Source: Ranitomeya imitator
Taxonomy: Eukaryota
Length of the DNA: 64,000 bases
Direction of reading: 5' to 3'
NCBI RefSeq assembly: GCF_032444005.1
Contig: NC_091289.1
Span: forward strand, 7,192,001-7,256,000
Shown here: piece after piece, positions 8,401 to 58,484 of the stretch
Numbering within the stretch: the first letter of the stretch is position 1
Layout of the letters: each line of letters begins with the position of its first letter
Position numbers and translations under genes: made by a program
The notes under the pieces: generated by a model
Told to the model about the DNA's origin: nothing
Database searches by the model: none
What the model saw: the letters and a program-made list of their open reading frames with translations, nothing else

Positions 8401-10921
8401 CCAGCGCCAACCGAGGCACGAGCACAGAGCGACTCCCAGCGCCAACAGAGGCACGAGCACAGAGCGACTCACAGCGCCAACCGAGGCACGAGCACAGAGC
8501 GACTCACAGCGCCAACCGAGGCACGAGCACAGAGCGACTCCCAGCACCAACTGCGGCACGAGCACAGAGCGACTCCCAGCGCCAACCGAGGCACGAGCAC
8601 AGAGCGACTCCCAGCGCCAACCGAGGCACGAGCACAGAGCGACTCCCAGCGCCAACCGAGGCACGAGCACAGAGCGACTCCCAGCGCCAACCGAGGCACG
8701 AGCACAGAGCGACTCCCAGCGCCAACCGAGGCACGAGCACAGAGCGACTCCCAGCGCCAACCGAGGCACAAACACAGAGCGACTCCCAGCGCCAACCGAG
8801 GCACGAGCACAGAGCAACTCCGAGCACCTCCGAGCACCAACCGAGGCACGAGCACAGAGCAACTCCCAGCGCCAACCAAGGTACAAGCACAGAGCAACTC
8901 CCAGTGCCAACCACGGCACAAACACAGGGCGACTCCCAGCGCCAACCAAGGTATGAGCACAGAGCAAACCCCAGCGATAACCGAGGTACGAGCACAGAAC
9001 AACTCCCAGTGCCAACCGCGGCACAAACACAGAGTGACTCCCAGCGCCAACCGAGGTACGAGCACAGAGCAACTCCAAGCACCAACCGAGGCACGAGCAC
9101 AAAGCAACTCCTATCGCCAACTTCGGCAAGAGCACAGAGCGACTCCCAATGACAACCGAGGCACGAGCACAGAGCGACTCCCAGCGCCAACCGAGGCACA
9201 AACACAAAGCGACTCCCAGCGCCAACCGAGGCACAAACACAAAGCGACTCCCAGCGCCAACCGAGGCACGAGCACAGAGCGACTCCCAGAGCCAACCAAA
9301 GCACGAGCACAGAGCGACTCCCAGCGCCAACCGAAGCACGAGCACAGAGCGACTCCCAGGGCCAACTGCGGCACGAGCACAGAGCGACTCCCAGCGCCAA
9401 CCGAGGCACGAGCACAGAGCGACTCCCAGCGCCAACCGAGGCACGAGCACAGAGCGACTCCCAGCGCCAACCGAGGCACGAGCACAGAGCGACTCCCAGC
9501 GCCAACCGAGGCACGAGCACAGAGCGACTCCCAGCGCCAACCGAGGCATGAGCACAGAGCGACTCCCAGCGCCAACCGAGGCACGAGCACAGAGCGACTC
9601 CCAGCTCCAACCGAGGCACGAGCACAGAGCGACTCCCAGCGCCAACCGAGGCACGAGCACAGAGCGACTCCCAGCGCCAACCGAGGCACGAGCACAGAGC
9701 GACTCCCAGCGCCAACCGAGGCACGAGCACAGAGCGACTCCCAGCGCCAACCGAGGCACGAGCACAGAGCGACTCCCAGCGCCAACCGAGGCACGAGCAC
9801 AGAGCGACTCCCAGCGCCAACCGAGGCACGAACACAGAGCGACTCCCAGCGCCAACCGAGGCACGAGCACAGAGCGACTCCCAGCGCCAACCGAGGCACG
9901 AGCACAGAGCGACTCCCAGCGCCAACCGAGGCACGAGCACAGAGCGACTCACAGCGCCAACCGAGGCACGAGCACAGAGCGACTCACAGCGCCAACCGAG
10001 GCACGAGCACAGAGCGACTCCCAGCGCCAACTGCGGCACGAGCACAGAGCGACTCCCAGCGCCAACCGAGGCACGAGCAGAGCGACTCCCAGCGCCAACC
10101 GAGGCACGAGCACAGAGCGACTCCGAGCACCAACCGAGGCACGAGCACAGAGCGACTCCCAGCGCCAACCGAGGCACGAGCACAGAGCGACTCCCAGCGC
10201 CAACCGAGGCACGAGCACAGAGCGACTCCCAGCGCCAACCGAGGCACGAGCACAGAGCGACTCCCAGCGCCAACCGAGGCACGAGCACAGAGCCACTCCC
10301 AGCGCCAACCGAGGCACGAGCACAGAGCGACTCCCAGCGCCAACCGAGGCACGAGCACAGAGCGACTCCCAGCGCCAACCGAGGCACGAGCACAGAGCGA
10401 CTCCCAGCGCCAACCGAGGTACGAGCACAGAGCAACTCCCAACACCAACCGAGGTACGAGCACAGAGCGACTCCCAACACCAACCGAGGCACGAGCACAG
10501 AGCGACTCCCAGCGCCAACCGAGGCACGAGCACAGAGCGACTCCCAGCGCCAACCGAGGCACGAGCACAGAGCGACTCCCAGCGCCAACTGCGGCACGAG
10601 CACAGAGCGACTCCCAGCGCCAACCGAGGCACGAGCAGAGCGACTCCCAGCGCCAACCGAGGCACGAGGACAGAGCGACTCCGAGCGCCAACCGAGGCAC
10701 GAGCACAGAGCGACTCCCAGCGCCAACCGAGGCACGAGCACAGAGCGACTCCCAGCGCCAACCGAGGCACGAGCACAGAGCGACTCCCAGCGCCAACCGA
10801 TGCATGAGCACAGAGCGACTCCCAGCGCCAACCGAGGCACGAGCACAGAGCGACTCCCAGCGCCAACCGAGGCACGAGCACAGAGCGACTCCCAGCGCCA
10901 ACCGAGGCACGAGCACAGAGC
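5445..10921. repeat. 35-bp GC-rich minisatellite, about 155 copies, with higher-order blocks
   Basis: Unit gcacgagcacagagcgactcccagcgccaaccgag; 35-aa (3-unit) periodicity in ORFs of all six frames. Confidence 0.97.
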
Positions 10922-11207
10922 GTACACCACAGCCCCAATTCATCATCTGTGTTTTTAAGGAACCTTTCAGTTTGTCTTGTGGTATTATTCGTCATCGGGG
11001 AGGGGGGGGGGGGGGGGGCTGCTCCACCAAGTTCTATCAAATGTCTCACGAAACTGAAAGAACATTACGCAAGATCAATGAAGGTCACTAATTCTATAAC
11101 CGATTCAGAGTCACATGATCAGTTATGATGGCGCATGTCTACAACTGCGCAGGGATAAAGTTACCAGACGCCGTGGGAAAAGTGCAGAATAATGTCATAT
11201 TTACAAA

Positions 11208-15308: not shown

Positions 15309-16019
15309 ATGGCTCCAACACGAGGGATGTCAGTTGAAACAAAGGAGATGATTATCAAACTCTAAAAAGAGGGTAAATCATCACGCAATGTTGCAAAAGA
15401 TGTTGGTTGCTCACAGTCAGCTGTGTCTAAAATCTGGACCAAATACAAACAACATGGGAAGGTTGTTAAAGGCAAACATACTGGTCGACCAAGGAAGACA
15501 TCAAAGTGTCAAGACCGGAAACTTAAAGCAATATGTCTCCAAAACAGGAAATGCAGAACAAAACAAATGAGGAACGAATGGGAGGAAACTGGAGTCAACG
15601 TTTGTGACCGAACTGTAAGAAACAGACTAAAGGAAATGGGATTTACATACAGAAAAGCTAAACGACAGCCATCATTAACCCCTAAACAGAAAAAAACAAG
15701 GTTACAATGGGCTAAGGAAAAGCAATCGTGGACTGTGGATGACTGGATGAAAGTCATATTCAGTGATGAATCGCGAATCTGCATTGGGCAAGGTGATGAT
15801 GATGGAACTTCTGTTTGGTTCCGTCCCTATGAGATTTATAATGATGACTGCCTGAAGAGAACATGCAAATTTCCAGAGTCATTGATGATATGGGACTGCA
15901 TGTCAGGTAAAGGCACTGGGGAGACGGCTGTCATTACATCTTCAATAAATGCACAAGTTTATGTTGATATTTTAGACACTTTTCTTATCCCATCAATTGA
16001 AAGGATGTTTGGGGGATGA
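15309..16019 (+). pseudogene. Tc1 transposase pseudogene, N-terminal part (paired-like HTH, GRPR motif, first catalytic D in FSDESR)
   Basis: MAPTRGMSVETKEMIIKL*KEGKSSRNVAK...GRPRKT...VIFSDESR. Premature TAA at 15363-65, one extra G at 16011-15, then the TTAA insertion. Confidence 0.93.
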
Positions 16020-16659: not shown

Positions 16660-18445
16660 ATTTTTTTTATTTTCACAAGTGTAAAAACAGAAATGTAACC
16701 ATAAATTTTGTTATGCAATTTCTCCTGAATACGCCAATACCCCATATGTGGGGGTAAACCACTGTTAGGGCGCACCGCAGAACTTAGAAGTGAAGGAGCG
16801 CCGTTTGACTTTTTCAATGCAGAATTGGCTGGAATTGAGATCGGACGCCATGTCACGTTTAGAGAGCCCCTGATGTGCCTAAACAGTGGAAACTCCCCAG
16901 AAGTGACACCATTTTGGAAACTAGACCCCTTAAGGAACTTATCTAGATGTGTGGTGAGCACTTTGAACCCCCAAGTGCTTCACAGAAGTTTATAACGTAG
17001 AGCCGTGAAAATAAAAAATCGCTTTTGTTTACACAAAAATGATCTTTTTGCCCACAAATTCTTATTTTCACAAGGGTAACAGGAGAAATTAGACCACAAA
17101 AGTTGTTGTGCAATTTCTCCTGAGTACGCTGATACCCAATATGTGGGGGTAAACCACTGTTAGGGCGCACCGCAGAGCTTGGAAGTGAAGGAGCGCCGTT
17201 TTACTTTTTCAATGTAGAATTGGCTGGAATTGAGATTGGACGCCATGTCGCGTTTGGAGAGCCCCTGATGTGCCTAAACAGTGGAAACCCCCCACAAGTG
17301 ACACCATTTTGGAAACTAGACCCCTTAAGGAACTTATCTAGATGTGTGGCGAGCACTTTGAACCCCCATGTGCTTCACAGAAGTTTATAATGCAGAGCCG
17401 TGAAAATAAAAAATATTTTTTTTTTCCACAAAAAAGATTTTTTAGCCACCAAATTTTTATTTTCACAAGGGTAACAAGAGAAACTGGACCCCAAAAGTTG
17501 TTGTCCAATTTGTCCTGAGTATGCTGGTACCCCATATGTGGGGGTAAACCACTGTTTGGGCGCACGGCAGAGCTCGGAAGGAAGGAGCGCCGTTTTGGAA
17601 TGCAGACTTTGATAGAATGGTCTGCGGGTATTATGTTGCATTTGCAGAGCCCCTGATGTACCTAACCAGTAGAAACCCTCCACAAGTGACCCCATTTTGG
17701 AAACTAGACCCCCCAAGGAACTTATCTAGATGTGTGGTGAGAACTTTGAATGCCCAAGTGCTTCACAGATGTTTAGAATGCAGAGTCGTGAAAATAAAAA
17801 ATATTTTTTTTTCCACAAAAAAGATATTGTAGCCCCCAAGTTTTTATTTTCACAAGGGTAACAGGAGAAATTGGACTGCAATAGTTGTTGTCCAATTTAT
17901 CCCGAGTACGCTGATGCGCCATATGTGGCGGTAAACCACTGTTTGGGCGCACGGCAGAGCTCGGAAGGGAAGGAGCGCCTTTTTGGAATGCAGACTTTGA
18001 TAGAATGGTCTGTGGGCATTATGTTGCGATTGCAGAGCCCCTGATGTACCTAAACTGTAGTAACCCCCCACAAGTGACCCCATTTTGGAAACTAGACCCC
18101 CCAAGGAACTTATCTAGATGTGTGGTGAGAACTTTGAATGCCCAAGTGCTTCACAGAAGTTTAGAATGCAGAGTCGTGAAAATAAAAAATATTTTTTTTT
18201 CACAAAAAAGATTTTGTAGCCCCCAAGTTTTTATTTTCACAAGGGTAACAAGAGAAATTGGACCCCAGAAGTTGTTGTCCAATTTATCCCGAGTACGCTG
18301 ATGCCCCATATGTGGGGGTAACCCACTGTTTGGGCGCACGGCAGAGCTCAGAAGGGAGGGAGCACCATTTGACTTTTTGAGCGCAAAATTGGCTGTCGTG
18401 TTTGGAGACCCCCTGATGTACCTAAACAGTGGAAACCCCCCAATT
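16660..18445. repeat. About 390-bp tandem repeat, 4-5 copies, inside the piggyBac-like element
   Basis: Landmark tttcacaag..gtaa recurs near 16671, 17066, 17460, 17848 and 18236; ggaaactagacccc..aaggaacttatctagatgtgtgg recurs with the same spacing. Confidence 0.9.
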
Positions 18446-19425
18446 CTAGCTCCAACCCTAACCCCAACACACCCCTAACCCTAATCCCAACCTCATCCAT
18501 AATCCTAATCACTAACCCTAACCATAATCACAACCCTTACCCCAAGTCAACCCTAACCATAACCCTAATCAAAACCCTAAATCCAACACACCCCTAATCC
18601 TAATCTCAACCCTAACCTCAAACCTAACCCTAATCCCAATACACCCCTAATCACAACCCTAACCTTAACCCTAATCCCAAACCTAACCCTAATCCCAAGC
18701 GTAACCCTAATGCCAACCCTAACCCTAATACGAACCCTAATCCAAACCCTAACCCTAATCCCAGCTCTAACCCTAACTTTAGCCCCAACCCTAACCCTAG
18801 CCCTAGGGCTACTTTCACACTTGCGTCGTTTGGCATTCCGTCGCAATCCGTCGTTTTGGACAAGAAACGGATCCTGCAAATGTGCCCGCAGGATGCGTTT
18901 TTTGCCCATAGACTTGTATTGCCGACGGATCGTGACGGATGGCCACACGTCGCGTCCGTCGTGCACTGGATCAGTTGTGTTTTGGCGGAGCGTCGGCACA
19001 AAAAACGTTCAATGAAACGTTTCTTTGTACGTCGCATCCGCCATTTCTGACCGCGCATGCGTGGCCGTAACTCCGCCCCCTCCTCCCCAGGACATAGATT
19101 GGGCAGCGGATGTGTTGAAAAACTACAGCTGCTGCCCACGTTGTGCACAATTTTCACAACGTGCGTCGGTATGTCGGGCCGACGCATTGCGACGGCCCCG
19201 TACCGACGTAAGTGTGAAAGAAGCCTAACCCTAAGTTTAGCCCCAACCCTAACCCTAAATTTAGCCCCAACCCTAGCCCTAACCCTAACCTAACCCTACC
19301 CCTAACCTAACCCTACCCCTAACCTAACCCTACCCCTAACCTAACCCTACCCCTAACCCTACCCCTAACCTAACCCTACCCCTAACCCTACCCCTAACCT
19401 AACCCTACCCCTAATTTTAGCCCCA
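18446..19425. repeat. Degenerate telomere-like (CCCTAA)n tract split by a MITE
   Basis: ccctaa/cctaaccc variants at 18446-18806 and 19226-19425. Confidence 0.9.
18807..19225. mobile_element. Harbinger-type MITE inserted in the CCCTAA tract
   Basis: TIR ggctactttcacacttgcgtcg / cgacgtaagtgtgaaagaagcc; flanks tag / taa (imperfect TSD). Confidence 0.8.
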
Positions 19426-20192: not shown

Positions 20193-20501
20193 ATCATTTT
20201 TCAAGATGATAATGCATCCTGCCATAGAGCAAAAATTGTGCAAACATTCCTGGAAAAAAGACACATAAGGTCAATGTCATGGGCTGCAAATAGTCCGGAT
20301 CTCAATCTGATTGAAAATCTTTGGTGGAAGTTGAAGAAAATGTTCGATGACAAGAAACCAACCTGCAAAGCTGATCTGGGGACAGCAATCAGAGAAAGAT
20401 GGAGGCAGAGTGATGAAGAGTCCTGTGTGACCCTCAGTAAGTCCAGGCCTCAGAGACCGCAAGCTGTTAGAAAAGCCAGAGGTGGTGCAACAAAATACTA
20501 G
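20193..20501 (+). pseudogene. Tc1 transposase pseudogene, C-terminal part (DD34E)
   Basis: IIFQDDNASCHRAKIVQTFLEKRHIRSMSWAANSPDLNLIENLWWKLKK...KARGGATKY*; 34 residues between D and E. Confidence 0.93.
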
Positions 20502-24884: not shown

Positions 24885-27800
24885 GGGCCCCCCCATAACA
24901 ACACAGCGCCAACCATAGACCTCCCCCAATAACAGCGCCAACCATAGACCTCCCCCAATAACAGCGCCAACCATAGACCTCCCCCAATAACAGCGCCAAC
25001 CATAGACCTCCCCCAATAACAGCGCCAACCATAGACCTCCCCCAATAACAGCGCCAACCATAGACCTCCCCCAATAACAGCGCCAACCATAGACCTCCCC
25101 CAATAACAGCGCCAACCATAGACCTCCCCCAATAACAGCGCCAACCATAGACCTCCCCCAATAACAGCGCCAACCATAGACCTCCCCCAATAACAGCGCC
25201 AACCATAGACCTCCCCCAATAACAGCGCCAACCATAGACCTCCCCCAATAACAGCGCCAACCATAGACCTCCCCCAATAACAGCGCCAACCATAGACCTC
25301 CCCCAATAACAGTGCCAGCCATAGACCTCCCCCAATAACTGCCATTCATAGACCTCCCCCAATAACAGCGCCAACCATAGACCTCCCCCAATAACAGCGC
25401 CAACCATAGACCTCCCCCAATAACAGCGCCAACCATAGACCTCCCCCAATAACAGCGCCAACCATAGACCTCCCCCAATAACAGCGCCAACCATAGACCT
25501 CCCCCAATAACAGCGCCAACCATAGACCTCCCCCAATAACAGCGCCATCCATAGACCTCCCCCAATAACAGCGCCAACCATAGACCTCCCCCAATAACAG
25601 CGCCATCCATAGACCTCCCCCAATAACAGTGCCAACCATAGACCTCCCCCAATAACAGCGCCATCCATAGACCTCCCCCAATAACAGTGCCAGCCATAGA
25701 CCTCCCCCAATAACTGCCATTCATAGACCTCCCCCAATGATAGTGCCATCCATAAAGCCCCCAATAACAGTGCCATCCGTAGACCTCCCCCAATAACAGC
25801 GCCAACCACAGAGCCCCCAATAACAGTGCCAGCCATAGACCTCCCCCAATGACAGCGCCATCGATAGAGCCCCCAATAACAGCGCCATCCATAGACCTCC
25901 CCCAATAACAGTGCCATCCATAGACCTCCCCCCAACAACAGCGCCATCCATAGACCTCCCCCAATAACAGTGCCATCCGTAGACCTCCAATAACAGTGCC
26001 ATCCGTAGACCTCCCCCAATAACAGTGCCATTCATAGACCTCCCCCAATAACAGCGCCAACCATAGAGCCCTCAATAACAGCGCCATCCATAGACCTCCC
26101 CCAATAACAGCGCCATCCATAGACCTCCCCCAATAACAGTGCCATCCATAGACCTCCCCCAATGACAGCGTCATCCATAGAGCCCCCAATAACAGCGCCA
26201 TCCATAGACCTCCCCCAATAACAGCGCCATCCATAGACCTCCCCCAATAACAGCGCCAACCATAGACCTCCCCCAATGACAGTGCCATCCATAGACCTCC
26301 CCCAATAACAGTGCCATCCATAGACCTCCCCAATAACAGCGCCATCCATAGACCTCCCCCAATAACAGTGCCAACCATAGACCTCCCCCAATAACAGTGC
26401 CAACCATAGACCTCCCCCAATGACAGCGCCAACCATAGACCTCCCCCAATAACAGCGCCATCCGTAGACCTCCCCCAATAAGAGTGCCATCCATAGACCT
26501 CCCCCAATAACAGCGCCATCCATAGAGCCCCCAATAACAGTGCCAACCATAGACCTCCCCCAATAACAGTGCCAACCATAGAGCCCCCCAATAACAGTGC
26601 CAGCCATAGACCTCCCCCAATAACTGCCATTCATAGACCTCCCCCAATGATATTGGGGGCTTTATGGATGGCACTATCATTGGGGGAGGTCTATGAATGG
26701 CAGTTATTGGGGGAGGTCTATGGCTGGCACTGTTATTGGGGGGCTCTATGGTTGGCACTGTTATTGGGGGAGGTCTATGGTTGGCACTGTTATTGGGGGA
26801 GGTCTACGGATGGCACTGTTATTGGGGGCTTTATGGATGGCACTAACAGTGCCATCCGTAGACCTCCCCCAATAACAGCGCCATCCATAGACCTCCCCCA
26901 ATAACAGCGCCAACCATAGACCTCCCCCAACAACAGCGCCATCCATAGACCTCCCCCAATAACAGTGCCAACCATAGAGCCCCCAATAACAGTGCCAGCC
27001 ATAGACCTCCCCCAATGACAGCGCCATCGATAGAGCCCCCAATAACAGCGCCATCCATAGACCTCCCCCAATAACAGTGCCATCCATAGACCTCCCCCCA
27101 ACAACAGCGCCATCCATAGACCTCCCCCAATAACAGTGCCATCCGTAGACCTCCAATAACAGTGCCATCCGTAGACCTCCCCAATAACAGTGCCATTCGT
27201 AGACCTCCCCCAATAACAGCGCCAACCATAGAGCCCCCAATAACAGCGCCATCCATAGACCTCCCCCAATAACAGCGCCATCCATAGACCTCCCCCAATA
27301 ACAGTGCCATCCATAGACCTCCCCCAATGACAGCGCCATCCATAGAGCCCCCAATAACAGCGCCATCCATAGACCTCCCCCAATAACAGCGCCATCCATA
27401 GACCTCCCCCAATAACAGCGCCAACCATAGACCTCCCCCAATGACAGTGCCATCCATAGACCTCCCCCAATAACAGTGCCATCCATACACCTCCCCAATA
27501 ACAGCGCCATCCATAGACCTCCCCCAATAACAGTGCCATCCGTAGACCTCCCCCAATAACAGTGCCATCCATAGACCTCCCCCAATAAGAGTGCCATCCA
27601 TAGACCTCCCCCAATAACAGCGCCATCCGTAGACCTCCCCCAATAACAGCGCCATCCGTAGACCTCCCCCAATAACAGCGCCATCCGTAGACCTCCCCCA
27701 ATAACAGTGCCAACCATAGAGCCCCCAATAACAGTGCCAGCCATAGACCTCCCCCAATGACAGCGCCATCCATAGACCTCCCCCAATAACAGCGCCATCC

Positions 27801-28600
27801 GTAGACCTCCCCCAATAACAGCGCCATCCGTAGACCTCCCCCAATAACAGTGCCATCCATAGACCTCCCCCAATAACAGCGCCATCCGTAGACCTCCCCC
27901 AATAACAGCGCCATCCGTAGACCTCCCCCAATAACAGCGCCATCCGTAGACCTCCCCCAATAACAGTGCCAACCATAGAGCCCCCAATAACAGTGCCAGC
28001 CATAGACCTCCCCCAATGACAGCGCCATCCATAGACCTCCCCCAATAACAGCGCCATCCGTAGACCTCCCCCAATAACAGCGCCATCCGTAGACCTCCCC
28101 CAATAACAGTGCCAACCATAGAGCCCCCAATAACAGTGCCAGCCATAGACCTCCCCCAATGACAGCGCCATCCATAGACCTCCCCCAATAACAGCGCCAT
28201 CCGTAGACCTCCCCCAATAACAGCGCCATCCGTAGACCTCCCCCAATAACAGTGCCAACCATAGAGCCCCCAATAACAGTGCCATCCATAGACCTCCCCC
28301 AATAAGAGTGCCATCCGTAGACCTCCCCCAATAACAGCGCCATCCGTAGACCTCCCCCAATAACAGCGCCATCCGTAGACCTCCCCCAATAACAGTGCCA
28401 ACCATAGAGCCCCCAATAACAGTGCCATCCATAGACCTCCCCCAATAAGAGTGCCATCCATAGACCTCCCCCAATAACAGCGCCATCCGTAGACCTCCCC
28501 CAATAACAGCGCCATCCGTAGACCTCCCCCAATAACAGCGCCATCCATAGACCTCCCCCAATAACAGCGCCATCCGTAGACCTCCCCCAATAACAGTGCC
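24885..28600. repeat. 29-bp minisatellite, about 125 copies, filling SETMAR intron 1, with an internal inverted block
   Basis: Unit aataacagcgccaaccatagacctccccc; 29-aa periodicity; inverted segment at 26651-26845. Confidence 0.97.
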
Positions 28601-29040
28601 AGATATTTTAGTGTTTTTTCATCTTCCTGTTGAATACTGGACCCTATGCCCTGATCTCAGCATGTGAATACGACCCATCACCGTCCTCACACAGGAGGCT
28701 CCTCCCACTGAGGGGTAATCAGAAGGATTAGTTTTAATAGGAGTGGACAATCCCACTGTAAGTATGGGGGATATGGGGGTCATGGGGGTCTCTGGCTGGA
28801 AGCAGGCTGGACCATGGGGGGGGACGACGTGAACGGATCTGTACAAGAAACCATTGTCTTACACGACCCAAAACATTACTGCGCCAACACTACTGCTGCC
28901 TGCAATGGAGAAAGCAAAAACCCGGCCCCGGAGCAATATAACAGGACTGCACTGATAGAACCCGTCTCTGCATTTTCTAGATCTCTGCTGCTGTCAGTGA
29001 ATAGAAGTATTCCTATTTGTATCCCACAGACCTAAACTTC

Positions 29041-29167: not shown

Positions 29168-29482
29168 TCCACATGAGGTCGGGGCAGGTCTTCACTGACA
29201 GCGAGGAGGAATCTTGGAATTAGTGAGGAATGGAAACACCCAGGAATGAATTCGTGATTCCATTTGCGTCATTATTTGGTGGATTTTTTCGCTTTTGCGC
29301 TGTTGACAGTTGGTAAAATCCTGCCCAGCGTTAATGATGACTCATCACATCGTGTAAGAGTTTTATAAATCTGATGCAAGGGGCGGGGCCATGACAGCAG
29401 GGCGGAGCTACGATAGCGGGGGCGGGGAAAGGATGGTGATGGCAGCTGGGCTTTGTAGTGTCTCATGTCTCTTCTTGCACAG

Positions 29483-30250
29483 TACTCCGCAGAGCTGGTT
29501 GCCGGTCCCGGCGCAGAGTTGGACCCGAGTGAAGTCACCGTCCAGGGCTGTGAGTGTCAGGAGCCGCACTGCACGCCGGGGAAGTGCGCCTGCCTCCCTC
29601 ATGGCGAGAATTACCGCCACCGCCGGCTGCTCAGTGCCCAGAAGCCCGTCCTGGAATGTAACGTCTTGTGCCGCTGCGGTGACTCCTGTGCCAACCGAGA
29701 AACGCAGCGAGGACTGCAGTACCAGCTCCATGTGCGCCCGGTACCAGGGAAGGGCTGGGGCCTCTGCACCCAGGAGAGCGTGCCCAGCGGGCGCTTTGTC
29801 TGTGAGTATGCGGGCGAGGTCCTGGGGCCAGAGGAGGCGCGGCGCAGGATAAGGGTGCAGGACCCCAAATCCAATAACTACATCATTGCTGTACGAGAGC
29901 ACCTGCACAGCGGGCACGTCCTGGAGACATTCGTGGACCCCACCTATGTGGGCAACATTGGGAGGTTTCTGAATCATTCGTGCCAGCCTAACCTGGTTAT
30001 GGTGCCGGTCCGTACCCACTCCATGGTGCCCAGGCTGGCGCTGTTCGCTGCCCGGGACATACAGGCCGGGGAGGAGTTGTGCTACGATTATTCAGGAATG
30101 GCGTTTAATTTTACTCCGGACAGTGAGAGGCAAAGCGGGCACCGGCACGGCACAGAAAGCAGAAGCCAACGCAAGAAGTGTCTGTGCGGCACTGCCCCCT
30201 GCTCGGGGTATCTGCCCTATGATGCCACGCTCTATAAAACGGTGACATGA
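29483..30250 (+). CDS. SETMAR: SETMAR coding exon 2: pre-SET, SET and post-SET domains, ending in TGA
   Basis: Acceptor cttcttgcacAG|TAC. GCECQEPHC..C.C pre-SET, ECNVLCRCGDSCANR, GWGL, FVCEYAGE, NYIIAVREH, RFLNHSCQPN, ELCYDY, post-SET CLCGTAPC. Confidence 0.96.
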   Translation, partial: YSAELVAGPGAELDPSEVTVQGCECQEPHCTPGKCACLPHGENYRHRRLLSAQKPVLECNVLCRCGDSCANRETQRGLQYQLHVRPVPGKGWGLCTQESVPSGRFVCEYAGEVLGPEEARRRIRVQDPKSNNYIIAVREHLHSGHVLETFVDPTYVGNIGRFLNHSCQPNLVMVPVRTHSMVPRLALFAARDIQAGEELCYDYSGMAFNFTPDSERQSGHRHGTESRSQRKKCLCGTAPCSGYLPYDATLYKTVT

Positions 30251-32883: not shown

Positions 32884-33338
32884 CTGTACAAGAAACACAG
32901 TGAGTTACAGACCCCCGAGGAAGCGGCAAGAACTAAACAGTAAATTCCTTGGAAAAGGAGGAAATGCATGAGATGATGCATGATCCATCGTCAGGGCAGA
33001 TTTCTACATAGATCTGAGCTCTAAGAGCAGAGCTGCGGTGTAAAGCATGGGGAACAAGCAGCTCCAGCTTCTGATGGGAAAGGAGATGGATTGTAAACTA
33101 ACCAGACGACATCTTCAGTGCGGCTGTACAGTGTAATTCTAACTGAACTATTAGAGCGGCGCTGCACTGTAAAGCATGGACGGCCGCAGATAAGACAGGA
33201 GATAACTAGTCACAGATCAGGGCCAGGATGTAATAAAGCAAAGATGCAGTGTAAAGCAGGGAGGCTCAGCTGAGCAGAGACGGAGCAGCTCTGCTGGAGA
33301 CACAGATCTTACAGCAGGTAGAGAAGGATCCTGCTCAC

Positions 33339-33452
33339 CGGGTCGTGCGCCTCGTCGGCCGCGTGCTGCGTGCCCCACCAGTCCGATGTCCATTCCCAGG
33401 CGTTTCCCACCATATTGTGGAGGCCATAACTGTTCGGAGGAAACGCGGTCAC
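33339..33452 (-). CDS. SUMF1: SUMF1 exon 7
   Basis: [38 protein letters not shown]; AG/GT flanks; 114 nt. Confidence 0.96.
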
Positions 33453-33527
33453 CTGGAGGAAAGAAGACGCAGAAATGACGCAGCTACCGAGATCAGAGGA
33501 AAAGTGATAGCGAGCGCGGAGACTCAC

Positions 33528-33642
33528 CGGACACGTCTGCACGTAGCCGTCCGCACCAGTGTTCCTATCGGGGAAGTCTCCCTGCCAGACATTGGCATAA
33601 TGTTCTCCCTTTGGCTCCAACTTGTTTCCCCAAGGGAAAAGT
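33528..33642 (-). CDS. SUMF1: SUMF1 exon 6
   Basis: (R)[38 protein letters not shown]|GTGAGT; 115 nt. Confidence 0.96.
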
Positions 33643-34106
33643 CTGATGAAAAAATACAATCAATGCCCAATACAAAGTAACTAGGAAGGGGTAAAGCCTC
33701 CAAATACAACAGCGAATACAATCCACAGAGGTGCAAACATAGGAGGAGACCCCCGAGGAAACATGCGTCACCGAGTGTCCCACCGGCCAGCACCCCCACT
33801 AAATCATATATCAGGATATCACTGAGAACGATCAATCAGGAGCTGATACATCATAGATACACGAATAAATGAAATCAGTAACAAGGATAATTAGGCGGAT
33901 CAATGCTCGGACGACAGCATCCTGCGCTACATGGGAAATGGGATCCTATTTATAGACTTAACACATTCACAGATCTGGAGATAAAGAGGAAAATCTTGTA
34001 AAAGAAAAATAAGATCCATTATTAACCCACAAATTGTGTAGACTCCGGCACCAAGAACATTGTCACCCATCCTGGGACTCCTCAATTATCGAATGGATCA
34101 TAAACT

Positions 34107-37100
34107 ATAATACTGCCTCTGTGTATAGGAATATAACTACTATAATACTGCTCCTATGTACAAGAACATAACTATTATAATACTGCCCCATGTACAAGAA
34201 TATAACTACTATAATACTGCTCCTATGTACAAGAATATAACTACTATAATACTGCCCCATGTACAAGAATATAGCTACTATAATACTGCCCCTATGTACA
34301 AGAATATAACTACTATAATACTGCCCCTATGTACAAGAATATAACTACTATAATACTGCCCCATGTACAAGAATATAACTACTATAATACTGCTCCTATG
34401 TACAAGAACATAACTATTATAATACTGCCCCATGTACAAGAATATAACTACTATAATACTGCCCCATGTACAAGAATATAACTACTATAATACTGCTCCT
34501 ATGTACAAGAACATAACTATTATAATACTGCCCCATGTACAAGAATATAACTACTATAATACTGCCCCATGTACAAGAATATAGCTACTATAATACTGCC
34601 CCTATGTACAAGAATATAACTACTATAATACTGCCCCTATGTACAAGAATATAACTACTATAATACTGCCCGATGTACAAGAATATAGCTACTATAATAC
34701 TGCTCCTATGTACAAGAATATAACTACTATAATACTGCCCCTATGTACAAGAACATAACTATTATAATACTGCCCCATGTACAAGAATATAACTACTATA
34801 ATACTGCTCCTATGTACAAGAATATAACTACTATAATACTGCCCCTATGTACAAGAATATAACTACTATAATACTGCTCCTATGTACAAGAACATAACTA
34901 TTATAATACTGCCCCATGTACAAGAATATAACTACTATAATACTGCCCCTATGTACAAGAATATAACTACTATAATACTGCTCCTATGTACAAGAACATA
35001 ACTATTATAATACTGCCCCATGTACAAGAATATAACTACTATAATACTGCTCCTATGTACAAGAACATAACTATTATAATACTGCCCCATGTACAAGAAT
35101 ATAGCTACTATAATACTGCCCCTATGTACAAGAATATAACTACTATAATACTGCCCCTATGTACAAGAATATAACTACTATAATACTGCTCCTATGTACA
35201 AGAATATAACTACTATAATACTGCTCCTATATACAAGAATATAACTACTATAATACTGCTCCTATGTACAAGAATATAACTACTATAATACTGCCCCTAT
35301 GTACAAGAATATAACTACTATAATACTGCTCCTATGTACAAGAATATAACTACTATAATACTGGACCTATGTACAAGAATATAACTACTATAATACTGCT
35401 CCTATGTACAAGAAGATAACTACTATAATACTGCTCCTATGTACAAGAATATAACTACTATAATACTGCTCCTATATACAAGAATATAACTACTATAATA
35501 CTGCTCCTATGTACAAGAATATAACTACTATAATACTGCTCCTATGTACAAGAATATAACTACTATAATACTGCCCCTATGTACAAGAATATAACTACTA
35601 TAATACTGCTCCTATGTACAAGAATATACTAGCATACTGCCCCTATGTACAAGAATATAACCTATAATACTGCCCCCTATATACAAGAATATAACTACTA
35701 TAATAGTGCCCCTATGTACAAGAATATAACTACTATAATACTGCTCCTATGTACAAGAATATAACTACTATAATACTGCCCCCTATGTACAAGAATATAA
35801 CTACTATAATACTGCCCCTATGTACAAGAATATAACTACTATAATACTGCCCCTATGTACAAGAATATAACTACTATAATACTGCCCCTATGTACAAGAA
35901 TATAACTACTATAATACTGCCCCTATGTACAAGAATATAACTACTATAATGCTGCCCCCTATGTACAAGAATATAACTTCTATAATACTGCCCCTATGTA
36001 TAAGAATATAACTACTATAATGCTGCCCCCTATGTACAAGAATATAACTACTGTAATACTGCCCTTATGTATAAGAATATAACTACTATAATACTGCTCA
36101 TCTGTACAAGAATATAACTACTATAATACTGCTCCTATGTACAAGAATATAACTACTAGAATACTGCCCCTATGTACAATAATATAACTACTATAATACT
36201 GCCCCTATGTACAAGAATATAACTACTGTAATACTGCCCCTATGTATAAGAATATAACTACTATAATACTGCTCATCTGTACAAGAATATAACTACTATA
36301 ATACTGCTCCTATGTACAAGAATATAACTACTATAATACTGCCCATGTGTACAAGAATATAACTACTATAATACTGCTCCTATGTACAAGAATACAACTA
36401 CTATAATACTGTCCCTATATACAAGAATATCACTACTATAATATTGCCCCTATGTACAAGAATATAACTACTATAATACTGCTCCTATGTACAAGAATAT
36501 CACTACTATAATACTGCTCCTATGTACAAGAATATAACTACTATAATACTGCTCCTATGTACAAGAATATAACTACTATAATACTGCTCCTATGTACAAG
36601 AATATAACTACTATAATACTGCCCCTATGTACAAGAATATAACTACTATAATCCTGCTCCTATGTACAAGAATATAACTACTATAATACTGCTCCTATGT
36701 ACAAGAATATAACTACTATAATACTGCTCCTATGTACAAGAATATAACTACTATAATACTGCCCCATGTACAAGAATATAGCTACTATAATACTGCCCCT
36801 ATGTACAAGAATATAACTACTATAATACTGCTCCTATGTACAAGAATATTACTACTATAATGCTGCTCCTATGTACAAGAATATAACTACTATAATACTG
36901 CTCCTATGTACAAGAATATTACTACTATAATACTGCTCCTATGTACAAGAATATTACTACTATAATGCTGCTCCTATGTACAAGAATATAACTACTATAA
37001 TACTGCTCCTATGTACAAGAATATAACTACTATAATGCTGCTCCTATGTACAAGAATATAACTACTATAATGCTGCTCCTATGTACAAGAATATCACTAC

Positions 37101-37356
37101 TATAATACTGCTCCTATGTACAAGAATATTACTACTATAATGCTGCTCCTATGTACAAGAATATTACTACTATAATACTTTTCCTATGTACAAGAATATC
37201 ACTACTATAATACTGCTCCTATGAACAAGAATATAACTACTATAATACTGCTCCTATGAACAAGAATATAACTACTATAATACTGCTCCTATGTACAAGA
37301 ATATAACTACTATAATACTGCCCCTATGTACAAGAATATAACTACTATAATACTGT
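34107..37356. repeat. 35-bp AT-rich minisatellite, about 93 copies, filling most of SUMF1 intron 5
   Basis: Unit tatgtacaagaatataactactataatactgcccc. Confidence 0.97.
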
Positions 37357-55185: not shown

Positions 55186-55394
55186 TGACGTCACCAGGCA
55201 GCAGCCAATCAGCGCTGGAGGAAAGTTGTCCCATCCTTCAAGTAACGGATCTGCCGCAGAGCATGCCGGGACGTGTAGTCAGCAGCGGAGGATGCAGGAC
55301 TACAATCCCCGCAGCCCATATAAAGAGACGGCGCTGGGAGGCGGAGGACAGAGCCGGGGAGCGGAGCGCGGATGGAGCCGGAGCGGCTGCAGGT
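55186..55394 (+). promoter_or_regulatory. Pol II promoter and probable non-coding first exon, putatively ITPR1
   Basis: CRE TGACGTCA at 55186-93, CCAAT at 55205-09, TATAAAG at 55319-25, GC-rich leader, donor CAG|GTACCG at 55393. Gene identity rests only on the SETMAR-SUMF1-ITPR1 order known in mammals; I found no ITPR1 coding exon in the window. Confidence 0.45.
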
Positions 55395-56686
55395 ACCGGC
55401 GCCCCTGTGCATCGCATCCCCCGCAGAGCGCAGCCCCCCGGTGTGTGCGGTGTCTGCGCTCCTCCGCCGCTACATTGTATCATTCCTGCGGCTTCTCTGC
55501 CTCCCCGAGCTCCTCCACTACAGCAGATTGGGATGCTGTAACCTAGGACATGGCTGGGGGGCTGACTGCTGGGGGGCTGACTGCTGGGGGTCCTGTGAAG
55601 TTGTGGCTGCAGTCCTGTGAAGGGTTAACGTCTGCGGGCAGGTAGCAGGGGCTCCGGTGGGCCCTGTGTCTGCACGGTCTGGGGGTCTCGGCTCCTTTCT
55701 CAGGTGTTTTCTCTTCTCCCGGTTTCAGACTTTTTGTTTATTCTTCAGAGATTTGTTTATTTTAGTGACATTAATGTTTCCCGAGGATCCGTCCGCTGTA
55801 GAATCCCCTCTGCTGATCGGGTTTCCCAGAACCTTCAGGTTCTAATCCACCATAGAGATCCAGGGCCTGACACTGTATAACACAGGCCGTCTGCTGCGGG
55901 GACTACAACTCCCAGCATTCACTGATGGCCGGGAGCTGCTGGTGTAGATCTGATGTTGGAGTGTGTAATACTGGGACTACAAGTGTCAGCATGCACTGAC
56001 AACCTGGATTCTTACCTGGTATGCTGCATTAAGGTCTAAGACGTCCGCACTATCAGCATGTACAGGATCCCCCCCCATATCCAGCATTGTAAGGGGTCTC
56101 CACAGGAGATGCCCAGGTTATACCGGCTGTACGTATATAATCATATACAGGAGATGCCCAGGTTATACCGGCTGTATGTATATAATTATATACAGGAGAT
56201 GCCCAGGTTATACCGGCTGTACGTATATAATTATATACAGGAGATGCCCAGGTTATACCGGCTGTACGTATATAATTATATACAGGAGATGCCCAGGTTA
56301 TACCGGCTGTATGTATATAATTATATACAGGAGATGCCCAGGTTATACCGGCTGTACATGTATAATTATATACAGGAGATGCCCAGGTTATACCGGCTGT
56401 ACGTATATAATTATATACAGGAGATGCCCAGGTTATACCGGCTGTATGTATATAATTATATACAGGAGATGCCCAGGTTATACCGGCTGTACATATATAA
56501 TTATATACAGGAGATGCCCAGGTTATACCGGCTGTATGTATATAATCATATACAGGAGATGCCCAGGTTATACCGGCTGTATGTATATAATCATATACAG
56601 GAGATGCCCAGGTTATACCGGCTGTACGTATATAATCATATACAGGAGATGCCCAGGTTATACCGGCTGTACATATATAATTATAT

Positions 56687-57483
56687 CCAAAACCAAAAAC
56701 GAAAACAGAAGCAGCAATCAGTCCAAAATAATGCAAAAATTACAACAAACTTTATTGATCATAAGGACAGGTAAAAAATAACGGAGAGATAAAACAATCC
56801 CCGTACTACACGTAGCATGCACACATACTATGGGCAGGTGATAGGTGCCAGTAATATTGTACAAACTACCCTGTGGATACAGTACACTAAACGTTATAAG
56901 CTATGCACAAGTCACCGCATATGATTACATGTATAGCGACCCCTATAGGGTACCCCTTGAGAAAGTCAGTAGCCGAAACGCGCGTCGGGGGGGTCAGGTG
57001 TGCGGTGCCTTTGGACACGTGTTATCTGTGTACTCTGCCCGGTATGTATACATGATACTATGCATTGTCGCCATTTCCTGTACCTTATGGGTCGCTATAC
57101 ATGTAATCATATGCGGTGACTTGTGCATAGCTTATAACGTTTAGTGTACTGTATCCACAGGGTAGTTTGTACAATATTACTGGCACCTATCACCTGCCCA
57201 TAGTATGTGTGCATGCTACGTGTAGTACGGGGATTGTTTCATCTCTCCGTTATTTTTTACCTGTCCTTATGATCAATAAAGTTTGTTGTAATTTTTGCAT
57301 TATTTTGGACTGATTGCTGCTTCTGTTTTCGTTTTTGGTTTTGGTTATTAATATGGAGTGTGTCCACTATGGTCCGATTTAGGGTCCCACTATAATATAT
57401 TATATTATATTATATATAGATATACCCTATATGGGTTTTTGAAATAATGTTGGTGACCTTTCGCTTATCCACTTTGTATATTT
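56687..57483 (+). mobile_element. Penelope-like element remnant: inverted pLTR configuration, 797 bp
   Basis: 256-bp inverted arms (56687-56942 / 57089-57344), hammerhead core in the spacer, AATAAA in the right arm, 14-bp TSD atatataattatat at 56673-86 and 57484-97. Confidence 0.75.
56953..56990 (+). ncRNA. Minimal type I hammerhead ribozyme motif
   Basis: CCCC-UUGAGAA-A-GUCAGUAGCC-GAAA-CGCGCG-UC-GGGG: stem I CCCC/GGGG, U3-A8 variant core, short stem II, GAAA, palindromic stem III, GUC cleavage triplet. Confidence 0.7.
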
Positions 57484-58484
57484 ATATATAATTATATACA
57501 GGAGATGCCCAGGTTATACCAGCTGTACATATATAATTACATACAGGAGATGCCCAGGTTATACCAGCTGTACGTATATAATTATATACAGGAGATGCCC
57601 AGGTTATACCAGCTGTACATATATAATTATATACAGGAGATGCCCAGGTTATACCGGCTGTACGTATATAATTATATACAGGAGATGCCCAGGTTATACC
57701 GGCTGTACGTATATAATTATATACAGGAGATGCCCAGGTTATACCGGCTGTACGTATATAATTATATACAGGAGATGCCCAGGTTATACCGGCTGTACGT
57801 ATATAATCATATACAGGAGATGCCCAGGTTATACCGGCTGTACGTATATAATCATATACAGGAGACGCCCAGGTTATACCGGCTGTACGTATATAATCAT
57901 ATACAGGAGATGCCCAGGTTATACCGGCTGTACATATATTATTACATACAGGAGATGCCCATGTTATACCGGCTGTACATGTATAATTATATACAGGAGA
58001 TGCCCAGGTTATACCGGCTGTACATATATAATTATATACAGGGGATGCCCAGGTTATACCGGCTGTACATATATAATTATATACAGGAGATGCCCAGGTT
58101 ATACCGGCTGTACATATATAATTATATACAGGAGATGCCCAGGTTATACAAGCTGTACATATATAATTATATACAGAGGATGCCCAGGTTATACCGGCTG
58201 TACATATATAATTATATACAGGAGATGCCCAGATTATACTGGCTGTACACATATAATTATATACAGGAGATACCCAGGTTATACCAGCTTGCTTTACATG
58301 AATGGTGCAAGTGAACGTGATCAGTTTCAGATGGTGTTAGAGAATTGTACTTTCTGACAGTTTTCAATGACCAAGGTCCTGTGTGTATTTTTTCTTTTTT
58401 TTTTCTTTTTGGCCATAATGTGGGGAAGGAAAAGGTTAATAAATTTTCCAGCATAGCCCGAAGATCTGAAATTTATCTCTGATG

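What the first reader, a model, noticed from the sequence alone, without database searches (positions are those of the whole stretch)
56687..57483. Hammerhead ribozyme in the loop of a 256-bp near-perfect hairpin (Penelope-like insertion)
Seen: two 256-bp inverted arms (I noticed one mismatch) around a 146-nt spacer, the whole 797 bp flanked by a 14-bp TSD inside a 45-bp minisatellite. The spacer holds CCCC-UUGAGAA-A-GUCAGUAGCC-GAAA-CGCGCG-UC-GGGG. The core positions are present with a compensated U3-A8 pair in place of C3-G8. Stem II has 3 positions with one U-C mismatch, stem III has the self-complementary CGCGCG, and the predicted cut is after C56986. Known: minimal hammerheads with palindromic stem III occur in pLTRs of Penelope-like elements and cleave mainly as dimers. 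Inference: the motif is on the same strand as the promoter at 55.3 kb, about 1.6 kb downstream, and is followed by an AATAAA. A self-cleaving site, a long dsRNA stem and a cryptic poly(A) signal could therefore sit in the first intron(s) of the putative ITPR1 pre-mRNA.
Basis: partly seen in the sequence, partly recalled or inferred. Interest (0 to 1): 0.8.

Follow-up and report, generated by a model that had tools for sequence, protein, structure and literature searches.

The report
Truncated Penelope-type retroelement with hammerhead relic
A young 797-bp retrotransposon insertion of the Penelope-like kind, laid down head-to-head so that it forms a 256-bp hairpin, carries one weak-looking copy of the minimal hammerhead ribozyme typical of these elements; in a frog genome this is ordinary.

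Summary
A 797-bp insertion (56687-57483) interrupts a 45-bp minisatellite and has a 14-bp target-site duplication. It holds two 256-bp inverted arms with one mismatch and a 146-nt spacer. The spacer carries a type-I hammerhead-like motif (56953-56990) with every core position present and a U3-A8 pair.

The motif is not a chance match: my relaxed descriptor hit once in the window and never in 40 Mb of simulated sequence. It is, however, a poor hammerhead. It scores 16.1 bits against Rfam RF00163 (gathering score 34). Helix II has only three positions, one a U-C mismatch. The catalytic fold lies 10-18 kcal/mol above competing folds, and there is no second copy nearby to form a dimer.

An inverted truncated copy, a one-sided tail, an AT-rich target and a minimal hammerhead with a bulged base, G10.1-C11.1 and a palindromic helix III are together the published signature of Penelope-like element insertions. 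The host is a dendrobatid frog, and amphibians carry thousands of such motifs.

I found no other copy, so covariation and linkage to RT/GIY-YIG ORFs remain untested. A location in an ITPR1 intron is plausible from synteny but not shown. This is a known kind of element and of low interest.

The parts
56102..56686 (.). Left part of the host 45-bp minisatellite (13 units)
   Evidence: TRF period 45, 96% matches; register
56673..56686 (.). Left copy of the 14-bp target-site duplication ATATATAATTATAT (the AT-rich part of the minisatellite unit)
   Evidence: Sequence read
56687..56942 (-). Left arm: inverted, 5'-truncated copy of the element's 3' region. Its 3' end is at 56687 and it has no tail.
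   Evidence: Global alignment to the reverse complement of 57089-57344: 255/256 identical; I1
56943..57088 (+). Unique 146-nt segment, forming the loop of the hairpin. Read as the 5' continuation of the longer, + sense copy. 56945-56952 still resembles the reverse complement of 57081-57088 (7 of 8), so the junction is fuzzy over about 10 nt.
56953..56990 (+). Minimal type-I hammerhead-like motif. Helix I: 56953-56956 with 56987-56990. Core U3 U4 G5 A6 G7 A8 A9: 56957-56963. Extra A: 56964. Helix II plus loop: 56965-56974 (G-C, U.C, C-G, loop AGUA). G12 A13 A14: 56975-56977. Self-complementary ACGCGCGU: 56978-56985. C17: 56986, with the predicted scissile bond at 56986/56987.
   Evidence: Rfam RF00163 16.1 bits, E 0.15 in 101 nt; descriptor test; energies
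57089..57344 (+). Right arm: the same 256 bp in + orientation, contiguous with the spacer upstream and the tail downstream
57275..57280 (+). AATAAA hexamer inside the right arm (its mirror TTTATT is in the left arm)
   Evidence: no evidence of use
57345..57483 (+). 139-nt extension present at the right end only. I read it as a PLE-type 'tail', meaning reverse transcription started further downstream on this side.
   Evidence: 797 - 658 = 139; no significant similarity to the arms; concept from PMC8557442 and PMC11167929
57484..57497 (.). Right copy of the 14-bp target-site duplication
57484..58289 (.). Right part of the host 45-bp minisatellite (about 18 units)

Best explanation
This is one recent retrotransposition event of a Penelope-like element (PLE), or of a non-autonomous element moved by PLE machinery, into the AT-rich part of a minisatellite unit in a dendrobatid frog. 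I infer the mechanism from published PLE biochemistry. The GIY-YIG endonuclease made staggered nicks 14 bp apart, and both nicked strands primed reverse transcription on element RNA. One cDNA started at the site equivalent to 57483 and ran 541 nt (tail, arm, spacer). The other started 139 nt further in, at the site equivalent to 57344, and stopped after about 256-266 nt. Joining the two head-to-head gave [inverted 256 bp]-[146 nt]-[256 bp]-[139-nt tail] between 14-bp duplications. The longer copy reaches just far enough 5' to include the element's minimal type-I hammerhead, in its U3-A8 form. This hammerhead is a passenger from the parent element. In this copy it has a very short, mismatched helix II and no partner for dimer formation, so it most likely does not cleave at an appreciable rate. 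Shown here: the anatomy, the duplication, and the non-random hammerhead-like motif. Inferred: PLE parentage, two-strand priming, and inactivity. If the locus is transcribed, the main consequence would be a 256-bp near-perfect dsRNA stem, as with any inverted-repeat transposon pair.
For: The anatomy and TSD are exact. One mismatch in 256 bp between the arms indicates a single recent event. PMC8557442 describes PLE insertions as highly 5'-truncated, often with an inverted 5'-truncated copy adjacent at the 5' end forming inverted repeats, a tail often at one end only, and hammerheads in the pLTRs. PMC11167929 shows that purified Anolis PLE protein cleaves and extends both strands, prefers AT-rich DNA, and starts reverse transcription at two internal RNA sites whose interval is the tail. 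[quoted passage not shown] PMC4209133 lists the PLE min-HHR traits: helix I of 4-5 bp, a nucleotide between 9 and 10.1, G10.1-C11.1, palindromic 15.2-16.2, and a U3-A8 covariant with about 1,300 hits in Schistosoma. It also reports about 9,000 min-HHRs in Xenopus tropicalis. All these traits except a long helix II are present at 56953-56990. The motif is the only descriptor hit in the window and none occurred in 40 Mb of simulated sequence. GAAACGCGCGUC equals the RF00163 consensus. The host is a dendrobatid frog: the SETMAR exon is 96% identical to Ranitomeya variabilis. Against catalytic competence.
Against: No other copy of the element and no PLE consensus could be compared, so homology to a PLE is not shown. 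The insertion has no RT or GIY-YIG coding sequence. The tail is 139 nt, against 30-40 bp reported for PLEs. The hammerhead lies 358 and 497 nt from the two 3' ends, further than the roughly 90 nt in the Anolis element. Which arm the spacer continues is symmetric by structure alone; the + sense assignment rests on the hammerhead itself. The descriptor was written after seeing the motif. The Rfam score alone would not be significant at window scale. Nearest-neighbour energies do not capture tertiary contacts or protein assistance, so inactivity is a prediction.
Confidence: 0.7

Rival explanations
1. A working intronic ribozyme. The U3-A8 hammerhead, presented in the loop of the long hairpin, cleaves the host (putative ITPR1) pre-mRNA, alone or by pairing with a second transcript. 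Together with the dsRNA stem and the AATAAA it would modulate expression.
For: All core positions are present with a compensated 3-8 pair, helix I has four G-C pairs, and helix III is a perfect 8-nt palindrome. The motif is on the same strand as, and 1.6 kb downstream of, a promoter-like block. Synteny with SETMAR and SUMF1 fits ITPR1.
Against: 16.1 bits against a gathering score of 34. Helix II contributes nothing favourable: the catalytic fold is -1.4 to -2.6 kcal/mol against an MFE of -12.4, giving a population of about 1e-8, and the MFE fold sequesters U3-A6. There is a single copy, so no dimer partner in cis. Published PLE hammerheads are slow even as dimers or need PLE protein. The insertion is young, so there has been no time for selection. 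Exon structure is unknown, and no ITPR1 exon was found in the window.
Confidence: 0.04
2. A retroelement that is not a PLE, for example a 5'-inverted LINE/SINE insertion made by twin priming, or a monomer of an amphibian non-LTR retrozyme. The hammerhead would come from a retrozyme or satellite lineage.
For: A 14-bp TSD and 5' inversion also occur with LINE twin priming (own knowledge). Amphibian retrozyme families of 51-972 bp leave dispersed monomers, about 44% of them in introns in Xenopus (preprint 10.64898/2026.07.22.740005). The tail length and the hammerhead-to-3'-end distance do not match the one PLE studied biochemically.
Against: Twin priming normally inverts one part of a single copy and does not duplicate 256 bp. 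There are no tandem units and no second hammerhead. The same preprint derives retrozymes from PLE pLTRs, so this rival largely merges with the main explanation. There is no poly(A) or microsatellite 3' tail.
Confidence: 0.15
3. A foldback or MITE-type DNA transposon with 256-bp terminal inverted repeats that landed beside, or picked up, an unrelated 139-bp segment. The hammerhead-like string would be incidental.
For: Long, nearly perfect inverted repeats around a short loop are the hallmark of foldback elements and long-TIR MITEs (own knowledge).
Against: The right arm is not terminal. The 14-bp duplication and the minisatellite register bracket all 797 bp, not 56687-57344. The flanks of 56687-57344 (…TTATAT / TTATTAAT…) show no TA, TTA, TTAA or 8-bp duplication. 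The hammerhead motif is far from chance.
Confidence: 0.04
4. The hammerhead resemblance is chance, or partly an artefact of the junction. The 5' strand of helix I (56953-56956) lies within about 10 nt of where the inverted copy ends, so it may not be ancestral.
For: The Rfam hit is sub-threshold and appears only in a 101-nt search. Similarity between the arms trails on to about 56952, abutting CCCC.
Against: Even without helix I, the UUGAGAA core, bulge, G...C and GAAACGCGCGUC at correct spacing are very improbable. The 12-mer alone has 0.03 expected per window, and the pattern scans of viral and metagenome collections returned only hits lacking both helices. The PLE-type architecture independently predicts a hammerhead here.
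Confidence: 0.07

Closest known systems
Penelope-like element (PLE) insertions of the Penelope/Poseidon and Neptune clades, in the head-to-head 'inverted 5'-truncated copy plus tail' arrangement (Evgen'ev & Arkhipova 2005; Craig et al. 2021, PMC8557442; Frangieh et al. 2024, PMC11167929)
   Same: An inverted truncated copy abuts a longer copy. An extension is present at one end only. The target is AT-rich. The TSD comes from staggered nicks. A minimal hammerhead lies on the sense strand of the longer copy. The host taxon (amphibian) is rich in PLEs.
   Different: There is no RT/GIY-YIG ORF and no direct pLTR pair. The tail is 139 nt rather than 30-40 bp. The hammerhead lies 358-497 nt from the 3' ends rather than about 90 nt. 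Sequence homology to a named PLE is untested.
Minimal type-I hammerheads of metazoan PLEs (min-HHR; Cervera & de la Pena 2014, PMC4209133), including the U3-A8 covariant of Schistosoma Cercyon; Rfam RF00163
   Same: Helix I is 4 bp. There is an extra nucleotide between A9 and 10.1. G10.1-C11.1 is present. GAAA is followed by a self-complementary helix III (ACGCGCGU), as needed for dimer formation. C17 is present. U3-A8 replaces C3-G8.
   Different: Helix II has 3 positions with a U.C mismatch and a 4-nt loop, instead of 6-8 bp. The motif scores 16.1 bits, below the gathering score of 34. U3-A8 is documented in that paper for a flatworm PLE; I found no report for a vertebrate.
Animal non-LTR retrozymes and newt/Xenopus hammerhead satellites
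   Same: They carry type-I hammerheads with a weak helix III, occur in amphibians, derive from PLE pLTRs, and leave dispersed monomers that are common in introns.
   Different: Those are head-to-tail tandem units, each with a canonical hammerhead and loop-loop contacts, and they yield circular RNAs. Here there is a single motif, no tandem repeat, and an inverted arrangement.
Inverted-repeat transposon pairs in introns (for example inverted Alu pairs) as sources of long dsRNA
   Same: A 256-bp near-perfect intramolecular duplex would form if the locus is transcribed. It would be a candidate ADAR or Dicer substrate (own knowledge).
   Different: It was made in one insertion event rather than by two independent insertions. 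Transcription is not shown.

Membership tests
Hammerhead ribozyme, type I (Rfam RF00163) | Invariant core nucleotides U4 G5 A6 A9 G12 A13 A14 A15.1 U16.1 and H17 at the correct spacing | tested here: met
   56958-56960, 56963, 56975-56978, 56985, C56986. One extra A (56964) follows A9, as is usual in PLE min-HHRs.
Hammerhead ribozyme, type I (Rfam RF00163) | Watson-Crick pair between positions 3 and 8 (normally C-G) | tested here: met
   U56957 and A56962 form a U-A pair. This covariant is reported for PLE hammerheads (PMC4209133). Its effect on rate is not known for this context.
Hammerhead ribozyme, type I (Rfam RF00163) | Three helices: I closing the motif, a stable II, and III (or a palindrome allowing a dimer) | tested here: not met
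   Helix I is CCCC/GGGG and helix III is the palindrome ACGCGCGU, so both are met. Helix II is G-C, U.C, C-G with loop AGUA and is energetically unfavourable: the whole catalytic fold is -1.4 to -2.6 against an MFE of -12.4 kcal/mol. The motif fails the descriptor that requires 3 contiguous helix II pairs.
Hammerhead ribozyme, type I (Rfam RF00163) | Score at or above Rfam's gathering score | tested here: not met
   16.1 bits against 34. No hit in the whole-window or 1-kb searches.
Hammerhead ribozyme, type I (Rfam RF00163) | Covariation of the helices among homologous copies | not testable with these tools
   No second copy was found in the window. No relatives were retrieved from protein, metagenome or viral collections. 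No eukaryotic genome collection is on hand.
Hammerhead ribozyme, type I (Rfam RF00163) | Site-specific self-cleavage after position 17 | not testable with these tools
   This needs a transcription/cleavage assay.
Penelope-like element (PLE) insertion | ORF encoding a telomerase-like RT plus a GIY-YIG endonuclease | tested here: not met
   The longest ORF in the insertion is 99 aa and has no Pfam hit. No GIY...YIG or RT motif was seen in the window. The copy is therefore at most a truncated or non-autonomous derivative.
Penelope-like element (PLE) insertion | Complex arrangement: pLTR or an adjacent inverted 5'-truncated copy | tested here: met
   A 256-bp inverted copy abuts a 541-nt direct copy. 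Definition in PMC8557442.
Penelope-like element (PLE) insertion | Tail extension at one end only, reflecting two reverse-transcription start sites | tested here: inconclusive
   The one-sided extension 57345-57483 is present, but it is 139 nt against the reported 30-40 bp.
Penelope-like element (PLE) insertion | Minimal hammerhead motif on the sense strand | tested here: inconclusive
   The motif is present with four of the five family-specific traits, but helix II is too short and the Rfam score is sub-threshold.
Penelope-like element (PLE) insertion | AT-rich target with a duplication from staggered nicks | tested here: met
   The 14-bp TSD ATATATAATTATAT. AT-rich preference is reported in PMC11167929.
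Penelope-like element (PLE) insertion | Sequence homology to the pLTR or 3' region of an autonomous PLE in the same genome | not testable with these tools
   No frog genome or Repbase/Dfam library is available here.
Non-LTR retrozyme | Head-to-tail tandem units, each with a hammerhead | tested here: not met
   There is one motif only and no direct repeat of the unit.
Foldback / long-TIR DNA transposon | Inverted repeats at both termini, flanked by a short fixed-length TSD | tested here: not met
   The right arm ends 139 bp inside the insertion, and the TSD brackets all 797 bp.

The most novel reading that the evidence does not exclude
The family to which this copy belongs may be a currently active, non-autonomous PLE derivative in poison frogs. 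Its hammerhead would then be a genuine ultra-minimal U3-A8 variant (3-position helix II) that cleaves only as a dimer or with PLE protein, and its two reverse-transcription start sites would lie 139 nt apart. That would be the first vertebrate U3-A8 PLE hammerhead and an unusually clean natural record of two-strand priming.
Probability: 0.1. Interest if true: 0.45.

Novelty: new member of a known kind. Interest (0 to 1): 0.2.

Why it matters
The finding matters little on its own. Amphibian genomes hold thousands of PLE-derived hammerhead motifs, many of them in introns, and their weak activity is already documented.

The locus has modest value as a specimen. It sits in a perfectly periodic minisatellite, so the empty site, the 14-bp staggered cut and both cDNA start points can be read without ambiguity. 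This natural insertion shows the head-to-head, one-tailed product that the two-strand priming seen in vitro for an Anolis PLE would be expected to give.

It also suggests recent PLE-type retrotransposition in a dendrobatid frog. If the ITPR1 assignment holds, it places a 256-bp perfect dsRNA-forming repeat near that gene's 5' end. That could be checked in RNA-seq data for A-to-I editing or small RNAs.

Tried and rejected
1. Other copies in the window: blastn of the 797 bp against the window found only itself and its own arms.

2. Other copies through predicted proteins: the 99-aa ORF across the loop had no homologue among 5.8 billion proteins. Exact look-ups of the 48-aa and 35-aa arm ORFs found no encoding contig.

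3. Pattern scans: the generic PLE-type hammerhead pattern gave 35 hits in viral contigs, and a CCCC-anchored version gave 6 hits in metagenome contigs. All lacked helix I and II pairing and sat in what looked like prokaryotic sequence, so they are chance matches. An arm 23-mer gave 0 hits in viral contigs. A 19-mer from the hammerhead's 3' half gave one chance hit with no core.

4. Text search for the 12-mer in papers returned only unrelated primer and plasmid strings. The supplement of PMC4209133 with Xenopus hammerhead families is not held, and Lunse et al. 2017 is not held.

5. The idea that the tail is a diverged second hammerhead or the start of a next tandem unit: local alignment of the tail to the spacer on the + strand was at chance level (p about 0.4). 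Only a 13/14 match of a palindromic CCCTATA(G/T)GGG-type string stood out, so I dropped the idea.

6. DNA-transposon reading: rejected on the TSD and termini (see rivals).

7. ITPR1 coding exon: regexes for N-terminal motifs recalled from memory found nothing in the window. This is uninformative, because the first exons may be non-coding or lie beyond 64 kb.

Full report
**1. What is in the sequence**

A 45-bp minisatellite (unit ACAGGAGATGCCCAGGTTATACCGGCTGTACGTATATAATTATAT) runs from 56102 to 58289. It is interrupted by 797 bp at 56687-57483. The 14 bp ATATATAATTATAT occur on both sides, at 56673-56686 and 57484-57497. The next unit would be expected to start at 56687 and actually starts at 57498, which is 797 + 14 bp later. 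So this is a single insertion with a 14-bp target-site duplication.

A global alignment gives arms 56687-56942 and 57089-57344. They are 256 bp long, with one mismatch (A56791 opposite C57240), and enclose a 146-nt spacer at 56943-57088. Weak similarity continues for about 10 nt more (56945-56952 against 57081-57088, 7 of 8 after a 2-nt indel), so the inner junction is slightly fuzzy.

The remaining 139 bp (57345-57483) sit at the right end only and pair with nothing. As RNA the insertion folds at -543 kcal/mol, against -208 +/- 5.6 for shuffles. The window has no N and no second copy of the element.

**2. The hammerhead-like motif**

The + strand at 56953-56990 reads as follows:
- CCCC (helix I, 5' strand)
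- UUGAGAA (positions 3-9)
- A (extra nucleotide)
- GUC-AGUA-GCC (helix II and loop)
- GAA (positions 12-14)
- ACGCGCGU (15.1-16.1, self-complementary)
- C17
- GGGG (helix I, 3' strand)

All invariant positions are present. Positions 3 and 8 are U and A instead of C and G.

Rfam is unenthusiastic. There is no hit at gathering score in the window and none at E<=10 in a 1-kb search. When 101 nt are searched alone, RF00163 scores 16.1 bits against a gathering score of 34, E = 0.15. In that alignment GAAACGCGCGUC is identical to the model consensus, and the score is lost at positions 3 and 8 and in helix II.

The motif is still not a chance string. I wrote a relaxed min-HHR descriptor requiring:
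- helix I of 4 pairs;
- a CUGANGA or UUGANAA core;
- an optional bulge;
- G...C closing helix II, with at least 2 of its first 3 positions paired;
- GAAA;
- an A...U palindrome of 4-10 nt;
- H17.

It hits only this site in the window and never in 40 Mb of first-order Markov sequence. The descriptor was written after the fact, which is a caveat. The same core-plus-12-mer pattern scanned against viral and metagenome collections returned only hits with no helix I or II. That is what chance matches look like.

**3. Is it likely to cleave?**

Probably not at a useful rate.
- Helix II has three positions with a U.C mismatch. With either possible register, the catalytic secondary structure evaluates at -1.4 to -2.6 kcal/mol. 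The monomer MFE is -12.4 kcal/mol and pairs U3-A6 with the 3' side, giving an equilibrium population of about 1e-8 to 1e-9.
- The 8-bp intermolecular helix III of a dimer is worth about -13 to -15 kcal/mol. Even so, the hammerhead-compatible dimer (-17.8) lies 18 kcal/mol above the dimer MFE (-35.7).
- The insertion contains only one motif, because the inverted copy ends about 100 nt short of where its own would be. No partner exists in cis.
- Published PLE hammerheads show no activity as monomers and low activity as dimers (PMC4209133). The Anolis one cleaves only with PLE protein (PMC11167929).

These energy models ignore tertiary structure and proteins, so inactivity is a prediction and not a measurement.

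**4. What the whole thing is**

The architecture matches published descriptions of Penelope-like element insertions.
- Craig et al. (PMC8557442) describe high 5' truncation. [quoted passage not shown]
- Frangieh et al. (PMC11167929) show that purified PLE protein nicks and extends both DNA strands and prefers AT-rich DNA. It starts reverse transcription at two internal sites of the RNA, and the interval between those sites is the tail. Hammerhead cleavage is not needed for insertion.
- Cervera and de la Pena (PMC4209133) list the family-specific hammerhead traits. These are a helix I of 4-5 bp, a conserved extra nucleotide between 9 and 10.1, G10.1-C11.1, palindromic 15.2-16.2, a long helix II, and a U3-A8 covariant with about 1,300 hits in Schistosoma.

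Four of those five structural traits, plus U3-A8, are present here. Only the long helix II is missing.

My reading is therefore as follows. Staggered nicks 14 bp apart were made in the AT-rich part of a minisatellite unit. Both 3' ends primed cDNA synthesis on element RNA. One cDNA started at the equivalent of 57483 and ran 541 nt. The other started at the equivalent of 57344 and ran about 256-266 nt. The two were joined head-to-head. The hammerhead was carried along uncut.

One mismatch in 256 bp between arms that were identical at birth argues for a recent event. My rough estimate is a few million years at most.

**5. Host and context**

A pre-SET/SET exon at 29459-30247 (+) is 96% identical to SETMAR of Ranitomeya variabilis and 90% identical to that of Phyllobates terribilis. 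The window therefore comes from a dendrobatid frog. Amphibians are rich in PLEs and in hammerhead-bearing derivatives. X. tropicalis has about 9,000 min-HHRs, and about 44% of retrozyme-related sequences in Xenopus overlap introns.

FGE-sulfatase (SUMF1) exons lie on the minus strand at about 33.3-33.7, 37.4, 41.9 and 43.9 kb, so that gene's 5' end is near 44-46 kb. The order SETMAR-SUMF1-ITPR1 is known from human 3p26 (my own knowledge, not tested here). That order makes the promoter-like block at 55187-55326 (TGACGTCA, CCAAT, TATAAAG) a reasonable candidate for ITPR1. No ITPR1 exon was identified in 55-64 kb and there is no transcript evidence. 'First intron of ITPR1' thus remains plausible but unshown. 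The AATAAA at 57275-57280 is one hexamer in AT-rich DNA.

**6. What could not be done**

These were covariation among copies and linkage of copies to RT/GIY-YIG ORFs. No eukaryotic genome collection is available, and every indirect route failed. Membership of a named PLE family is therefore inferred from architecture and motif type. It is not shown by homology. The insertion itself encodes no RT or endonuclease. The 139-nt tail and the 358-497-nt distance from the hammerhead to the 3' ends differ from the single PLE studied biochemically.

**7. Verdict**

The insertion is Penelope-type and the motif is hammerhead-derived. There is no support for a functioning ribozyme or for any effect on ITPR1. 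It is a new member of a known, very abundant kind.

Interest is 0.2. That score is mostly for the unusually clean record of a head-to-head, one-tailed PLE insertion and for the U3-A8 core in a vertebrate.

Noticed in passing
window 29459-30247 (+); 33312-33659, ~37.35-37.47 kb, ~41.85-41.92 kb, ~43.7-43.87 kb (-): A SETMAR-like pre-SET/SET exon (96% identical to Ranitomeya variabilis SETMAR) is followed by SUMF1/FGE-sulfatase exons on the opposite strand. This is the SETMAR-SUMF1-(ITPR1) synteny, and it identifies the source as a dendrobatid frog.
   Followed up: partly
window 55187-55326 and 55893-55915: A promoter-like block on the + strand: TGACGTCA (55187), CCAAT (55205) and TATAAAG (55320). 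In addition, two GGACTACAA(T/C)(T/C)CCC strings resemble ZNF143/Staf sites (resemblance recalled from memory). This is the candidate ITPR1 promoter, but there is no transcript evidence.
   Followed up: partly
window, whole: About half of the 64 kb (roughly 31 kb) consists of some 20 different minisatellite arrays with periods of 12-395 bp. Examples are 5446-10938 (35 bp x 156), 24903-28601 (29 bp x 129) and 34104-37355 (35 bp x 93). Several lie inside SUMF1 introns.
   Followed up: no
window 19224-19414: An interstitial block of degenerate vertebrate telomere repeat (CCCTAA)n, about 190 bp.
   Followed up: no
window 15366-16016 (+) and 20193-20498 (+): Tc1/mariner-type transposase fragments (Pfam HTH_Tnp_Tc3_2 at 4e-17, DDE_3 at 8e-9). 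They are separated by about 4 kb that includes a 395-bp tandem array (16664-18392) and the telomere-like block.
   Followed up: no
window 57424-57437 versus 56939-56952: The tail contains TACCCTATATGGGT, a 13/14 match to the reverse complement of the string at the arm/spacer junction (ACCCCTATAGGGTA). Both are near-palindromes of the CCCTATAGGG type. The match exceeded all 200 shuffles but is short and unexplained.
   Followed up: partly
window 56687-56715 / 57316-57344: The tail-less 3' end of the element reads ...GCTGCTTCTGTTTTCGTTTTTGGTTTTGG in the sense orientation. This T/G-rich run marks the inner of the two putative reverse-transcription start sites. In the Anolis PLE the start sites lie in an AC-rich stem-loop of the RNA, so this looks different.
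   Followed up: no
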